Origin: Haliotis rufescens
Taxonomy: Eukaryota
DNA: 64,000 bases
Reading direction: 5' to 3'
Assembly: GCF_023055435.1 (NCBI RefSeq)
Contig: NW_025964223.1
Span: 49,476,001 to 49,540,000, forward strand
Shown: piece by piece, positions 2,650-40,554 of the stretch
Layout: each line of letters opens with the position of its first letter
How positions within the stretch are numbered: the first letter of the stretch is position 1
The notes under the pieces: generated by a model
The model's database searches: none
Seen by the model: the letters and a program-made list of their open reading frames with translations, nothing else
Told to the model about the DNA's origin: nothing
Made by a program: the position numbers and the translations under genes

Positions 2650-3680
2650 CACTTCCCCACAGACAGCCCGGCTGATACTCCGGAGGCGCGGACGTCGGAG
2701 GAGACACCCTGCTTGTTGTGGCTGATAGCTGCACGCTTACAAGCGCGTGTGCTTTTTCGTGTATTTGTATCCGAATAATCACTTCTTAATCAAGGAAAGT
2801 TTCAATTTCAACAATACAGTTAGGTAGTAAAAACATTTGGCTACATTTCGGTTACAATAGCAACGCTCACGGGTGAAGTTCAAAGCCACACGTGCTGTTT
2901 CCAATGAAGCGACCCAGTCTAAAATGTAGACATCGCTACTTTCAAAAGCACATTTTTAGCCTTGAGACTCAAGTTTATGCATTTTAAACGTTGCCTGTCA
3001 ATTCTCAATATATCTAACTATGAAAGTAAAACACAACACTCATCAGTATTGCCTATGATAAGCTAGAACAAGCGTTCAAACAACGACAATGAAGCACGTT
3101 TTTCTGACGACTTCGCCATTTTGCAACAGAAAACATTTGACACTATATTTCTGGAGACATAATTTTGGTCACTTCAATTAGAGTTGAAACTAACTTTGTC
3201 ATAACAAGTAAGTAACGGGGATTTTACTTTCAGGAAAACAGTCTAGTAAGACGAGGATCTCGGGACACAAGCAGCTAGGGCGCGAAGCCCCGAACAGTAA
3301 CATATATACATTGGTGTTTAGATCACTCGATCGGTCGTCACAGATTAAGTCTTTTTGCCTGTCTTAATAGCACGATATTAGTAGGGGTCTTCGTCGTTTG
3401 GATGTTAATTTTACCAGAACAATATAGGCTACCATGCATCAACGAAAAGTGAATGTTTCAGACGAAAGGCCGGATCGAGTGAGCGAGTGTGCCGGGCCTC
3501 GTGTTAAACAGTGATCACATGTTTTTACAACGGCTAGATTTTAATCCCTGTAAATATACATCATAAATCAACAAACACAACATGTCTACTGAACCCGCTG
3601 AAAACGCGAGCATGCTGTTTTCATGGCAATGTCTGTTTACCAATGTGTGGTGTCTATATGTAGCTAAAGTTTGCCGACAA

Positions 3681-3860
3681 ACTCCCCAACCAGCCAACAC
3701 CCAAAACCTAAACAACCTCACCTTACTCCTAGCATACATGCATAGTCAAAACTCACCAAAAGCTAGCATGAAATCCTTCTACAAAGTAGCTTTCAATCTA
3801 AAATTTACCGATCTTCCCTTCTTCCTCTTTAACCTCCATCTAAAAGAACTCACCGAATAA
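3681..3860 (+). pseudogene. C-terminal remnant of ORF1, LINE subtype A
   Basis: NLNNLTLLLAYM...KVAFNLK matches the ORF1 C-termini at 14919-16586 and 28363-30027. Confidence 0.85.
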
Positions 3861-3879
3861 AATAAAAAATAAAAAATAA

Positions 3880-37628: not shown

Positions 37629-37681
37629 TATTTGGGCTTTTAGTGTTTGGAGATTATGGATTTATTGTTTGTTTGGATTGT

Positions 37682-39269
37682 CTATAGTCCTGCGGTTGCT
37701 GTTGAGTAGTTTGTAAGAAATTCCTTGTAACTTTGAGTGGTCAGTTTTAGGTTTAGGGCTACTTTGTGAAGATTTTTGGAGCTAGCCTCTGGGTTTATTT
37801 GTTTGAGCATGTAGGCCAGTAAGATTGTGATGTTGTTTAGTTTGGAAGTTATGGGGGTTTGGGGTTGAGATTGGATTTTGCGTTTGCGGTTTTTAAATTT
37901 TTTAGGTGCTGATCGGGTAATTTCAATTTCGTTTGCATTATCTTCAGAATCGTATTCGTCTTCGTCTATATTGCTTTGGTTTATCTCCTCACTCTCCATG
38001 GGGGTTGTTTGTGTGTTTGGTAGTGCTTGCGTGTGCGTGCTGGGTATGTCCATGGGTTGAGTGCTGTTTGTGTCTTCGGGTAGTGCTTGCTCGTGTGTGG
38101 TTGTTGTTGCCCTGGTGGCTGCGGGTTGTATGGTGTTGGGTAGGGTTGAGGCGTGTGAGGTGCGGTTGGTTTTGCTTGCGGGTGTGGATGCAGCGAGTGG
38201 CTGTGGTGTGGCGAAAGTTTGGGGGTTGCGTGGGTGGTGGTTGAGTGTGGTTGTTGCTTGGGGGATTACCTTGGGGATGCCATCCCATGGGGATTGTAGG
38301 TGTCGGTCGTTGTTTGGTTGCGGTGTGGGTAAGAGTGGATTGTTTGTATGCTGTGTTTGTTTTCTTGTTTGGAGTTTGGCCGAGTCAATGTCGATGTGTT
38401 TGTTGGCCTGTTGGGTGAGGGTGTGTCTGTGGGGGCATTTGTTGGAGAGAGAGGAGTGATTAGTTGCTTTACAATGTATGCACCAGGGAGCGCAGGCTCC
38501 TGGGCATTGGGTTTGAGCACAAGTCCTACATTTGGTTTTTTTAAATGTACAGGTGTTAGCAGTATGATTGTATTGTAAACAGTTTGAGCATTGTTTTACT
38601 TGTTTAATGTAGGGTTTAACCTCTAGTTTAGTAGAAGCGCCGAAAGAGATGAAGTTTGGGGCTTGAGGGTACTTTTCTGATTTCTGAAAGTTTATGATAA
38701 CAATTGGTGTGTTTGTAGTTTTGCCGTTTCTGTTTGAAGTTATTCTCCTGGTGCTGGTTATTTTGGGTTGAAGAAGGGTATGGTTATTTAGGTTGGCTTC
38801 ATCTGTGTAAAGTGCTAAGTCTTCATCTGATTCCCTAGGATTTACTCTGATTACGCCTCTAGTATAAAGTTGCCAATTTGGGGTTTGATGGGTTACTGTA
38901 AATTGGAAGATCTCCGTTACTTTTTTAGCTAAGTTTAGTGATTCTAGGTCCGGAAAGATAATTTGGTATCCTTTGTGTGCCTCTCTGATTTTGTTGTATT
39001 GGATTTTTTGTTTTTTAAACCAGAGTCCTACTTTGTTAATTGAGAGTTCCTTAGTTAGATTTATGACGGGGCCTGCCGCACAGAAGTAGAGGGCGAAGGT
39101 GACCAGTGATGCTGCTTGTGATGTGAATGAGGTGTTGGAAGAGTCCAGCTTCCGTTTTTTAGGGTTTGTGGTGGCTGCGGTCGATTCGGAAGTTTTTGGA
39201 GGGTTGACTGTGGTTTTGTTTCCGAAATCGTGTGGTATGAGGGTCTCGGGCGTCCGATCGGAGGTGTTG
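37682..39269 (-). pseudogene. LINE ORF1 lacking its start codon
   Basis: Collinear with 28363-29950; the 5' part is deleted. Confidence 0.85.
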
Positions 39270-40554
39270 GTTTGGTGTTTTAAGTTGGCTTGGGTGTGAG
39301 TAATTTTAACCTAAATTGTATGGGTGTGTTGTGATAGTTACCGGGGTGTTGCTCTTGGGCTGGCTAGCAGTGGGAACTGTGCTGGCTTGGGAGGCTTTGC
39401 TGGGTGAGGTTGGCTTGGTGGCTGGATGGCTTGGGTTGCTTCGTAGGCTGAAGAGGTGTTGCTAGCTTGGAGTACAAACTGCAGATGCTACGAGAGAAGC
39501 ACAGAGAGCGAATGACACTTCCCCACAGACAGCCCGGCTGATACTCCGGAGGCGCTGACGTCGGAGGAGGAGACACCCTGCTTGTTGTGGCTGATAGCTG
39601 CACGCTTACAAGCGCGTGTGCTTTTTCGTGTATTTGTATCCGAATAATCACTTCTTAATCAAGGAAAGTTTCAATTTCAACAATACAGTTAGGTAGTAAA
39701 AACATTTGGCTACATTTCGGTTACAATAGCAACGCTCACGGGTGAAGTTCAAAGCCACACGTGCTGTTTCCAATGAAGCGACCCAGTCTAAAATGTAGAC
39801 ATCGCTACTTTCAAAAGCACATTTTTAGCCTTGAGACTCAAGTTTATGCATTTTAAACGTTGCCTGTCAATTCTCAATATATCTAACTATGAAAGTAAAA
39901 CACAACACTCATCAGTATTGCCTATGATAAGCTAGAACAAGCTTTCAAACAACGACAATGAAGCACGTTTTTCTGACGACTTCGCCATTTTGCAACAGAA
40001 AACATTTGACACTATATTTCTGGAGACATAATTTTGGTCACTTCAATTAGAGTTGAAACTAACTTTGTCATAACAAGTAAGTAACGGGGATTTTACTTTC
40101 AGGAAAACAGTCTAGTAAGACGAGGATCTCGGGACACAAGCAGCTAGGGCGCGAAGCCCCGAACAGTAACATATATACATTGGTGTTTAGATCACTCGAT
40201 CGGTCGTCACAGATTAAGTCTTTTTGCCTGTCTTAATAGCACGATATTAGTAGGGGTCTTCGTCGTTTGGATGTTAATTTTACCAGAACAATATAGGCTA
40301 CCATCCATCAACGAAAAGTGAATGTTTCAGACGAAAGGCCGGATCGAGTGAGCGAGTGTGCCGGGCCTCGTGTTAAACAGTGATCACATGTTTTTAGAAC
40401 GGCTAGATTTTAATCCCTGTAAATATACATCATAAATCAACAAACACAACATGTCTACTGAACCCGCTGAAAACGCGAGCATGCTGTTTTCATGGCAATG
40501 TCTGTTTACCAATGTGTGGTGGCTATATGTAGCTAAAGTTTGCCGACAAGCATT

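What the first reader, a model, noticed from the sequence alone, without database searches (positions are those of the whole stretch)
3676..39490. RNase H-bearing I-group-like LINE family that appears to home to the gene starts (5S and histone H1) of this array by position, not sequence
Seen: four independent insertions of three diverged subtypes. All lie within about 55 bp upstream of a gene start in a 3-kb unit: 5S -10/-5 (sense), 5S -55/-45 (antisense), H1 ATG -4 and H1 ATG -29 (both sense). None breaks a coding or rRNA sequence. The host sequences after the tails (GACAAGC, GGTAAAC, CACTATG, GTGAATT) share no consensus. Known: sequence-specific LINE targeting of multicopy genes occurs in the R1, R2 and Tx1 clades, and position-specific targeting near Pol III genes occurs in Dictyostelium TRE and yeast Ty3; I-group LINEs are generally considered untargeted. 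Inference: a lineage tethered to promoter machinery or open TSS chromatin of multicopy genes, using both Pol III and Pol II genes as safe harbours. n=4 is small.
Basis: partly seen in the sequence, partly recalled or inferred. Interest (0 to 1): 0.9.

Follow-up and report, generated by a model that had tools for sequence, protein, structure and literature searches.

The report
LINE that lands beside gene starts
An abalone jumping gene (a LINE with an RNase H domain) has repeatedly inserted at the same base just upstream of the start of 5S, U1 and U4 RNA genes and in the leader of histone H1 genes, so it seems to find promoters by position rather than sequence, something known so far only from yeast and slime-mould elements.

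Summary
The window is a 3,010-bp 5S rRNA / histone H1 tandem array of a Haliotis genome. It holds exactly four copies of one LINE superfamily with endonuclease, RT and RNase H domains, in three subtypes that are 78-84% identical. They lie at 5S -10, 5S -45 (antisense), H1 ATG -4 and H1 ATG -29.

The genome-wide picture has two parts.
- **Dispersed copies.** There are about 3,040 copies. Most of a 60-copy sample lie in unremarkable DNA, and a third are 57-70-bp stubs. The family is therefore not strictly targeted.
- **Exact hot spots.** Six of the 103 5S genes carry a sense copy at -9/-10, from at least two subtypes and with at least four insert lengths. Two carry an antisense copy at exactly -45, with different tail types. 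About 16 U1-like gene starts carry one at -8/-9, and one U4 gene at -8/-10. Four separate insertions lie in the 70 bp before the H1 ATG.

The bases after the nick differ between genes; only the distance to +1 is shared. This fits recognition of promoter-bound complexes or the DNA they distort, with insertions surviving only in redundant genes.

The closest analogues are Dictyostelium TRE5/NLTR-A and yeast Ty3. Neither is from an animal, and neither is listed at Pol II genes. Other first-stage notes of this scan saw the same pattern in neighbouring windows.

The parts
3681..7941 (+). Insertion A: 5'-truncated A-type LINE. It keeps the ORF2 region, with frameshifts, but not ORF1. Tail (TAAG)3. 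The target duplication GACAA lies at 3676-3680 and 7932-7936, so the coordinates given include the last 10 bp of host sequence before 5S +1.
7942..8060 (+). 5S rRNA gene directly downstream of A. The first-strand nick is at -10/-11.
   Evidence: (Rfam 111.5 bits)
10846..16986 (-). Insertion B: near full-length B-type LINE, antisense to 5S, tail (TCAG)n. The 14-bp target duplication lies at 10832-10845 and 16987-17001 (one extra G in the second copy). It spans 5S -58 to -45.
17046..17164 (+). 5S rRNA gene next to the 5' end of B.
24278..30515 (-). Insertion D: intact 6,238-bp D-type LINE. In element coordinates: 5'UTR 1-488 starting CAGT, ORF1 489-2153, ORF2 2207-5968 (EN-RT-RNase H-CCHC), 3'UTR about 270 nt, tail (TAAG)5. 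The 11-bp target duplication lies at 24267-24277 and 30516-30526.
23710..24273 (-). Histone H1 ORF (187 aa). Its ATG lies 4 nt after the tail of D and inside the target duplication.
33601..39486 (-). Insertion E: D-type LINE, 99.3% identical to D, with a 345-bp internal deletion near the 5' end. It has a 4-bp target deletion and no duplication. Its tail ends 29 nt before the H1 ATG.
33008..33571 (-). Histone H1 ORF downstream of E.
24301..24349 (-). Conserved 3'-terminal block of about 49 nt shared by all three subtypes. It also occurs at 7871-7916 (+), 10862-10910 (-) and 33619-33667 (-). It contains the 18-mer used to count the superfamily.
40524..40554 (+). Uninterrupted 5S upstream region. 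A TATA-like TATATG lies at -31..-26, roughly midway between the two exact hot spots (-45 antisense and -10 sense).
   Evidence: read directly from the sequence
40555..64000 (.). Eight uninterrupted 5S/H1 units of 3,006-3,010 bp. These serve as the reference for empty sites.

Best explanation
These are copies of a young, still coding-competent LINE superfamily of an abalone (Haliotis). Its architecture is apurinic-type endonuclease, RT, RNase H and a C-terminal CCHC motif, with tetranucleotide tails. It integrates by ordinary target-primed reverse transcription.

The first-strand nick is strongly biased to DNA at very active promoters.
- In the exact mode, the gene's template strand is nicked 8-10 nt upstream of +1 at 5S, U1-like and U4 genes. 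The element then lies in sense orientation, with its tail facing the gene and its 5' end at about the point where the host promoter starts transcription.
- A mirror site exists at 5S -45, on the other strand and in the other orientation.
- A looser mode scatters insertions over the first 70 nt or so of the H1 leader and hits U5 at +17.

The sequences after the nick are unrelated between genes and only the distance to +1 is kept. The landmark is therefore most likely a promoter-bound complex, or the DNA distortion it causes. The -45 and -10 sites bracket the TATA-like box of the 5S promoter roughly evenly.

Elsewhere in the genome the elements insert with little specificity. Promoter hits are seen today mainly in multicopy genes, because only there is losing one unit tolerated.

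Shown: the elements, the junctions, the repeated use of the same sites, and the lack of a shared sequence. Inferred: recognition of a complex or of DNA structure, the selection filter, and capture of the host promoter.
For: Within the array:
- Every match to a 21-nt 5S start (103 in the genome) lies in this one array.
- Six of those genes carry a sense copy at the same nucleotide, (TAAG)n followed by [G]ACAAGCATT then +1.
- The extra DNA in four of those units is about 3.06, 4.26, 5.74 and 6.24 kb. Both A-type and D-type 3' ends occur. These are therefore separate events. Chance expectation is 2e-4 hits, P about 1e-16.
- Two antisense copies with different tail types sit after the same base at -45.
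- The H1 leader has D at -4, E at -29, a B-type copy at about -52, and a D-type copy at about -70 beside an initiator-like TCATTC.
- Counting only events found without looking at gene starts, 7 of 8 fall in 5% of the unit, p = 6e-9.

Outside the array:
- U4 has a copy at -8/-10.
- About 16 loci have the tail followed by [T/C]TTCAGGC and then ATACTTACCTGGC.
- U5 was hit at +17.
- Among the 59 D-type copies, the 30 in hand represent about 25 events. Eight are at starts of 5S, H1, U4, U5 or a U1-like satellite.

No sequence rule was found. Twenty empty sites rebuilt from duplications show no consensus, and motif tests are weak.

Precedent: TRE5, NLTR-A and Ty3 target Pol III promoters by position through TFIIIB (PMC5911963, PMC5391098). 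The Drosophila I-element has a mild preference for active promoters that selection later erases (PMC10018349).
Against: - About 3,040 copies exist. A sample of 60 from one chromosome-sized contig (94 Mb) shows none at a known RNA gene start.
- No insertions were found at U6 or beside tRNA genes in the samples. The U2 pattern found none either, but its anchor was not verified for this species.
- The H1 sites are spread over 70 nt, and the H1 start site is only guessed from an initiator-like motif. The read data were contigs only and did not settle it.
- Counter-examples exist: one copy in the array spacer next to a (CA)n/poly-C tract, and one copy about 390 bp upstream of an internal coding exon, probably intronic.
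- The U1 loci are identified only by the 13-nt U1 5' signature. How many are independent could not be determined.
- Many D-type copies abut the ends of other retroelements, where the order of insertion is ambiguous.
- There are no chromatin, expression or protein-interaction data.
Confidence: 0.6

Rival explanations
1. Accessibility only. The endonuclease has no tether. It cuts wherever DNA is nucleosome-free, and in a silent-looking tandem array the only open DNA is at the two promoters. Selection then removes promoter hits in single-copy genes.
For: - The H1 insertions are spread over 70 nt.
- Thousands of copies sit in ordinary DNA.
- The Drosophila I-element shows only a broad, modest promoter preference (PMC10018349).
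- Insertions also cluster at ends of other repeats.
Against: - Open chromatin of 100-200 bp does not predict six hits at one nucleotide upstream of 5S, two at one nucleotide at -45, or the same 8-10 nt distance at U1-like and U4 genes.
- It does not predict the strict link between site and orientation.
Confidence: 0.2
2. Sequence-specific targeting, as in R1, Tx1 or Mutsu. The endonuclease or another domain reads a short motif that happens to occur at these sites, for example the CATT/initiator-like bases seen just before or at several starts.
For: - Hits at 5S are nucleotide-exact.
- CATT or TCAKTY occurs 6-11 nt after the nick at 5S (both sites), U4, U5, H1 and two unknown flanks.
- There is a weak CATT excess in dispersed copies, 8 of 57 against 3.6 expected, p = 0.025.
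Against: - The 8-10 nt after the nick differ completely between genes: GACAAGCATT, TTTCAGGC, TATAACATT.
- The rebuilt empty sites show no consensus.
- A 4-mer occurs millions of times, so it cannot explain the concentration on 5S, U1, U4 and H1.
- D and E lack the motif.
Confidence: 0.08
3. Insertion at host-made breaks. Transcription-associated nicks, from topoisomerase or R-loop processing at extremely active promoters, are used as primers, so the element's own endonuclease does not choose the site.
For: The targets are among the most heavily transcribed genes. The 5S -10 event has an unusually short 4-5 bp duplication, and E has a small target deletion.
Against: Tails are complete. B and D have regular 11-14 bp duplications like the dispersed copies. 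The endonuclease domain is intact in D.
Confidence: 0.06
4. Artefact of array dynamics or of how I looked. A few chance insertions were multiplied by unequal crossing-over, and pattern searches aimed at gene starts inflate the impression.
For: L017 and L018 are one event copied by a 28.3-kb duplication. Many U1 junctions are identical. Searches looked only near starts.
Against: - Different subtypes, tail types and insert lengths occur at the same nucleotide.
- Samples not chosen by position give 7 of 8 events in 5% of the unit.
- Targets lie on five or more contigs.
Confidence: 0.04

Closest known systems
Dictyostelid LINEs TRE5-A, NLTR-A and NLTR-B (L1 clade)
   Same: They are APE-type LINEs that integrate at a fixed distance upstream of Pol III genes whatever the flanking sequence. 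TRE5 sits 40-54 bp upstream of tRNA genes and 37-41 bp upstream of 5S. NLTR-A sits 2-6 bp upstream of tRNA genes. TRE5-A ORF1 protein binds TFIIIB subunits (PMC5911963, PMC5391098). The abalone -45 site at 5S is close to the TRE5 distance.
   Different: The abalone element is in an animal and has an RNase H domain. Its main site is -8 to -10. It also hits Pol II genes (U1-like, U4, H1). No tRNA gene association was seen, and most copies are dispersed.
Yeast Ty3 and relatives (Tj1, Tyl3, Ty3p)
   Same: They integrate precisely within a few bases of the Pol III start site, guided by TFIIIB rather than by sequence, and multicopy genes serve as safe harbours (PMC5911963).
   Different: They are LTR elements that use an integrase, not target-primed reverse transcription, and are listed only at Pol III genes.
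Sequence-specific LINEs of multicopy RNA genes (R1, R2, Mutsu in 5S, Keno and Utopia in U2)
   Same: They are LINEs living in rRNA or snRNA gene arrays with nucleotide-exact insertion sites (PMC5340908, PMC8869645, PMC10946416).
   Different: Those insert inside the gene at one recognised sequence. Here the sites lie upstream of +1 in several unrelated sequences, and the gene itself stays intact at 5S, U1 and U4.
Drosophila I-element
   Same: It has the same general architecture (APE-RT-RNase H, short-repeat tail). De novo insertions are about 2-fold enriched in promoters, and up to 6-fold in the most active ones. Inherited insertions are depleted there (PMC10018349).
   Different: Its preference is broad (100-200 bp upstream) and weak. 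No exact hot spots at small RNA genes are reported.
Gastropod I-superfamily LINEs (Nimbus, Ingi)
   Same: These are the families of this superfamily found in a survey of gastropod LINEs (PMC11203168). The domain order fits.
   Different: That survey describes no target preference. Membership of the abalone element in either family was not tested, because no reference sequences were available.

Membership tests
I superfamily of LINEs (I, Nimb, Ingi, Loa, R1, Tad1 group) | ORF2 with apurinic-type endonuclease, RT and RNase H in that order | tested here: met
   Pfam on the ORF2 of D: Exo_endo_phos 8-216, RVT_1 502-753, RNase_H 970-1097.
I superfamily of LINEs (I, Nimb, Ingi, Loa, R1, Tad1 group) | Cys/His knuckle in ORF1 and a CCHC motif after RNase H | tested here: met
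   ORF1 has CX2CX4HX6C at residue 288 and a second Cys-rich stretch. ORF2 has CX2CX7HX4C at residue 1185. No Pfam match for ORF1.
I superfamily of LINEs (I, Nimb, Ingi, Loa, R1, Tad1 group) | RT domain groups with reference I-superfamily elements in a tree | not testable with these tools
   No Repbase or Dfam references are available. The homologue search returned only unnamed or generically named proteins from Haliotis, bivalves and fish. PDB hits are uninformative.
R1 clade (sequence-specific) | One conserved target sequence recognised by the endonuclease | tested here: not met
   Unrelated sequences after the nick at 5S, U1-like, U4 and H1. No consensus in 20 rebuilt empty sites.
Tx1 clade (Mutsu, Keno and similar) | No RNase H domain (from my own knowledge of the clade, not tested here); insertion inside the RNA gene at a fixed sequence | tested here: not met
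   An RNase H domain is present. The 5S, U1-like and U4 insertions are upstream of +1.
Position-specific Pol III-gene targeting (TRE5 / NLTR / Ty3 type) | Fixed distance to the start of the gene, independent of flanking sequence | tested here: met
   8-10 nt at 5S, U1-like and U4, and -45 at 5S hit twice.
Position-specific Pol III-gene targeting (TRE5 / NLTR / Ty3 type) | tRNA genes are the main targets and most copies sit at Pol III genes | tested here: not met
   No tRNA gene lies within 200 bp in sense orientation in the 60 loci scanned. One stub lies 35 bp past a weak tRNA-like sequence, in antisense. Most copies are dispersed. Pol II genes are also hit.
Position-specific Pol III-gene targeting (TRE5 / NLTR / Ty3 type) | Element protein binds TFIIIB or another promoter factor | not tested
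   No interaction prediction was run, because there is no specific protein pair to justify it.

The most novel reading that the evidence does not exclude
An animal LINE ribonucleoprotein docks on TBP-containing initiation complexes of all kinds: 5S (Pol III), snRNA-type Pol II, and the H1 promoter. It nicks at their two edges, the template strand at about -10 and the other strand at about -45. A full-length copy therefore ends up with its first bases at the spot where the host promoter starts transcription, borrowing that promoter with an exact 5' end. This would be the first Ty3/TRE5-like 'read the machinery, not the sequence' targeting in Metazoa, and the first spanning two polymerases.
Probability: 0.3. 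Interest if true: 0.9.

Novelty: new variant of a known kind. Interest (0 to 1): 0.8.

Why it matters
Position-specific retrotransposon targeting is described so far only for compact yeast and slime-mould genomes and only at Pol III genes, as reviewed in PMC5911963. I found no paper describing an animal LINE with exact hot spots a fixed distance upstream of 5S, U1 and U4 starts (six literature searches).

If it holds, it matters in four ways.
- It gives a natural system for asking how target-primed reverse transcription can be steered by promoter complexes or promoter-distorted DNA.
- It explains how a LINE can live in multicopy genes without a sequence-reading endonuclease.
- It offers a route by which LINE tails come to lie next to snRNA and 5S genes, which bears on the origin of snRNA- and 5S-headed SINEs.
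- It may interest those building RNA-templated insertion tools aimed at safe-harbour loci.

D is intact and 99.3% identical to E, so the family is probably still active and open to experiment.

Tried and rejected
Explanations rejected:
1. **Chimeric retrocopies made by template switching (LINE + 5S/U1 RNA).** The array continues on both sides of the insertions, promoter bases remain between tail and +1, and target duplications are present.
2. **Priming by tail-to-target pairing.** The bases after the tails show at most 1 nt of possible overlap with (TAAG)n.
3. **A LINE footprint at 32725-32741.** This is only poly-C/(CA)n length variation.

Tests that were weak, negative or inconclusive:
4. 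**Initiator-like motif 8-11 nt after the nick in dispersed copies.** The signal is weak and is not used as evidence.
5. **Rfam and tRNA scans of unknown flanks.** Nothing was found apart from one weak tRNA-like hit.
6. **Sequencing runs and read laying, to find the H1 start and H1-LINE fusion transcripts.** Only assembled contigs of uncertain RNA/DNA origin were available, and breaks at insertion sites look like assembly-graph branches. The result is inconclusive.
7. **U2 and U6 junction patterns.** No matches. The U2 anchor came from general knowledge and may not fit this species.
8. **PDB sequence search for clade clues.** Uninformative.
9. **Comparison of the 1.3-kb non-autonomous element's ORFs with ORF1 of D and B.** No similarity.

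Full report
**What the window is**

The window is G000:C445:49476001-49540000 of a 1.33-Gb assembly. Rfam finds eleven 5S rRNA genes on the + strand and twelve histone 3' stem-loops on the - strand. Each stem-loop follows a 187-aa ORF. That exact protein is on record, and the other members of its 90% cluster are histone H1-like proteins of Haliotis rufescens, H. 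rubra, H. cracherodii and H. asinina. The genome is therefore an abalone.

One unit is 3,006-3,010 bp. 5S occupies unit positions 1-119 and H1 occupies 1349-1912 on the other strand. The two genes are transcribed divergently from a shared 1.1-kb spacer. From 40555 to the end of the window the array is uninterrupted.

**The observation**

Mapping one unit back onto the window gives five interruptions. Four of them carry the same conserved 3' end. Its 18-mer occurs exactly four times in the window and never in shuffles.

| Insertion | Window coordinates | Strand | Tail | Target site change | Position |
|---|---|---|---|---|---|
| A | 3681-7941 | + | (TAAG)3 | 4-5 bp duplication GACAA | first nick at 5S -10 |
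| B | 10846-16986 | - | (TCAG)n | 14-bp duplication | 5S -58 to -45, antisense |
| D | 24278-30515 | - | (TAAG)5 | 11-bp duplication including the H1 ATG | tail ends 4 nt before the ATG |
| E | 33601-39486 | - | (TAAG)n | 4-bp deletion | tail ends 29 nt before the ATG |

- D is intact: 5'UTR 488 nt beginning CAGT, ORF1 554 aa with Cys/His knuckles, and ORF2 1,253 aa with endonuclease, RT, RNase H and a terminal CCHC motif.
- E is 99.3% identical to D apart from a 345-bp deletion.
- A, B and D are 78-84% identical over ORF2.

One caveat is that D and E separate the H1 leader from its promoter.

**Is this more than chance?**

If the 75 bp before each of the two gene starts counts as target (5% of the unit), four of four has p = 6e-6. 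The real test is outside the window.

**The superfamily genome-wide**

The conserved 18-mer has 3,040 exact matches, against 0 for the reversed control. I fetched the first 60 matches in genome order on contig C1.

- Most lie in unremarkable, unique-looking DNA.
- About a third are stubs of 57-70 bp that all begin at the same base of the 3' block and carry 9-12 bp duplications (most 10-12 bp).
- No tRNA gene lies next to any of them in sense orientation. One stub lies 35 bp beyond a weak tRNA-like sequence, in antisense.
- The rebuilt empty sites have no consensus.

The family as a whole is therefore dispersed and has a permissive endonuclease.

**The D subtype**

A 26-mer specific to D-type 3' ends has only 59 copies. 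Thirty of them are in hand, because the best matches to the 3' end of D were fetched with flanks.

Collapsing obvious duplicates gives about 25 events. The flanks after the tail are:

- 5S at -9 (L002).
- The H1 leader, three times (D, E, and L017/L018 as one event).
- U4 at -8/-10 (L004; Rfam 120 bits for U4, starting 9 nt after the tail).
- U5 at +17 (L013).
- Two independent hits 6-8 bp apart in a 379-bp satellite whose monomer begins with a U1-like 5' end (L003, L006).
- Seven hits at the 5' end of other retroelements in the same orientation.
- Three hits in the antisense tail of another LINE.
- One in the array spacer, next to a (CA)n/poly-C tract (L012).
- One about 390 bp upstream of an internal coding exon of a gene with a Rab-binding PH domain, so probably in an intron (L009).
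- One 62-bp stub in unique DNA (L046).
- Four unknown flanks. Two of these (L019, L005) have an initiator-like TCATTC or TCAGTT 8-10 nt after the junction. L019 is followed by what looks like a short 5' exon and a splice donor.

**Pattern counts across the whole genome**

After no more genome letters could be fetched. I therefore used hypothesis-driven patterns: tail, then 0-60 nt, then gene start.

- *5S.* Every match to a 21-nt 5S start (103 in the genome) lies in this one 553-kb array.
  - Six of those genes have a tail followed by [G]ACAAGCATT and then +1.
  - The extra DNA in four of those units is about 3.06, 4.26, 5.74 and 6.24 kb.
  - Both A-type and D-type ends occur. The same nucleotide was therefore hit at least four times independently, against 2e-4 expected.
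- *5S antisense.* Two loci, one with a (TAAG)-type and one with a (TCAG)-type tail, sit after the same base at -45.
- *H1.* Apart from D and E there is a B-type copy at about -52. The L017/L018 copy lies at about -70, beside TCATTC. Those two loci are one event copied by a 28.3-kb duplication.
- *U1.* Sixteen loci on three contigs have the tail, then [T/C]TTCAGGC, then ATACTTACCTGGC. That places the tail 8-9 nt before +1. Two of them coincide with D-like copies.
- *U4.* The one locus already seen.
- *U6 and U2.* None.

**What the hot spots share**

The 8-10 nt between the nick and +1 are GACAAGCATT (5S), TTTCAGGC (U1-like) and TATAACATT (U4). They are unrelated in sequence and equal only in length.

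At 5S the two exact sites, -45 and -10, lie about 16 and 18 bp either side of the centre of a TATA-like TATATG at -31..-26. In both cases the nicked strand is the one whose new 3' end points toward that box.

This two-sided, orientation-linked pattern is what docking on a promoter-bound complex, or cutting at the edges of the DNA it bends, would give. A sequence-reading endonuclease or mere open chromatin would not predict it.

The positions resemble those of the dictyostelid LINEs: TRE5 at 37-41 bp upstream of 5S, and NLTR-A 2-6 bp upstream of tRNA genes. TFIIIB binding by TRE5-A ORF1 protein has been shown. They also resemble Ty3 (PMC5911963, PMC5391098). The link to a complex is my inference; nothing here tests it.

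**Why only multicopy genes, and why so many dispersed copies**

In Drosophila, de novo I-element insertions are about 2-fold enriched in promoters and up to 6-fold in the most active ones. Inherited insertions are 7-fold depleted there, because selection removes them (PMC10018349).

The same filter would leave promoter hits visible only where a unit can be lost, as in 5S, U1, U4/U5 and H1 arrays, alongside neutral dispersed copies.

A sense insertion at -9 with a 5-bp duplication puts the first bases of a full-length element where the host promoter initiates. Promoter capture with an exact 5' end is therefore a plausible benefit, but I could not test it. The only read data were contigs of uncertain origin.

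**Clade**

Architecture and motifs fit the I superfamily. The nearest proteins, at 46-53% identity, come from Haliotis and unnamed metagenome contigs; proteins at 35-43% come from bivalves and fish. A survey of gastropod LINEs finds Nimbus and Ingi as the members of that superfamily and reports no targeting (PMC11203168).

An RT tree against reference clades could not be built. The element does not behave like the R1 or Tx1 clades, which target one sequence.

**Literature**

Six full-text searches and the papers read list the following.
- Sequence-specific LINEs inside rRNA and snRNA genes (PMC8869645, PMC10946416, PMC5340908).
- Dada DNA transposons (PMC8869645).
- Position-specific elements at Pol III genes, only in yeasts and dictyostelids (PMC5911963).

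I found no description of an animal LINE with fixed-distance hot spots upstream of 5S, U1 and U4.

**Earlier notes of this scan**

First-stage notes on neighbouring windows report LINEs at the H1 start, an intact copy at the 5S start, and several families converging on the two starts. They are unverified readings of the same array. My pattern matches cover those places and agree.

**Limits**

- Half of the D-type copies and all U1 loci could not be read in full.
- The independence of the U1 events is unresolved.
- The H1 start site is inferred.
- No chromatin or binding data exist.

**Verdict**

The positional-homing reading is supported for a set of hot spots, but the family is not exclusively targeted. 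The mechanism remains inferred.

Noticed in passing
window 17517-22651 (+): A fifth insertion, from an unrelated LINE. ORF1 is 458 aa and coiled-coil-like. ORF2 is 913 aa with endonuclease and RT but no RNase H. There is an extra 199-aa ORF. It is flanked by a 167-bp duplication of unit positions 305-471, unusually long for a target duplication, and it is not at a gene start.
   Followed up: partly
window 1-779: The end of a roughly 2.7-kb insertion that sits immediately after the 5S terminator (unit position 123/124). The size comes from the 9,957-bp spacing between neighbouring 5S genes minus A. It is unrelated to the LINEs studied.
   Followed up: no
L031, L036, L038, L043, L046-L048, L053, L056, L063, L072, L073, L079, L086: About a third of the dispersed copies are 57-70-bp stubs. 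All start at the same base (CCGTGTGCGAAATACGC), at the foot of the conserved 3' hairpin-like block, and most carry 10-12 bp duplications (range 9-12 bp). This suggests a discrete stop for reverse transcription or a short template RNA.
   Followed up: partly
L003, L006, L007, L010, L011, L016 (C46:19.45-19.64 Mb): A 379-bp satellite whose monomer begins AAACTTACCTGATCATG, resembling a decayed U1 5' end. It was hit twice independently within 6-8 bp. One hit, carrying a 690-bp LINE fragment, was then amplified as a 1,831-bp higher-order repeat.
   Followed up: partly
L068, L071, L072, L073, L084: Five of 57 randomly sampled copies, with both tail types, lie before the boundary of the same roughly 85-bp conserved block (CACTTGCTTGATAAC...). 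Four lie 9-12 bp before it and one lies 36 bp before it. Duplications show the LINE arrived second in at least two cases. The block matches no Rfam family, and what it is remains unknown.
   Followed up: partly
L021, L025, L026, L028, L029, L030: A roughly 1.3-kb non-autonomous element with its own short ORFs ends in the same 49-nt 3' block as the LINEs. D-type copies abut its 5' end, in the same orientation, at six loci on four contigs. Which element arrived first is unresolved.
   Followed up: partly
L004 and L013: U4 is linked to U6 genes, whose 5' stem sequence (GTATTGCTAACGCAGTAC...) differs from the vertebrate one as I recall it. U5 forms a 631-bp tandem array.
   Followed up: no
window 6580-6940 and 12160-14871: In A and B the ORF2 reading frame is broken between RT and RNase H, whereas D reads through in one frame of 1,253 aa. 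Another first-stage note suggests programmed frameshifting.
   Followed up: no
C445:49561067-49598209 (outside the window): A 28.3-kb segmental duplication within the 5S/H1 array carries the same LINE insertion twice (L017, L018). In total, 25 of the 99 intervals between listed 5S genes exceed 3.1 kb, adding 256 kb.
   Followed up: partly
window 8611-8614 and 32725-32741: A 38-bp deletion in one unit, and poly-C/(CA)n length variation in another. This is ordinary array heterogeneity.
   Followed up: yes
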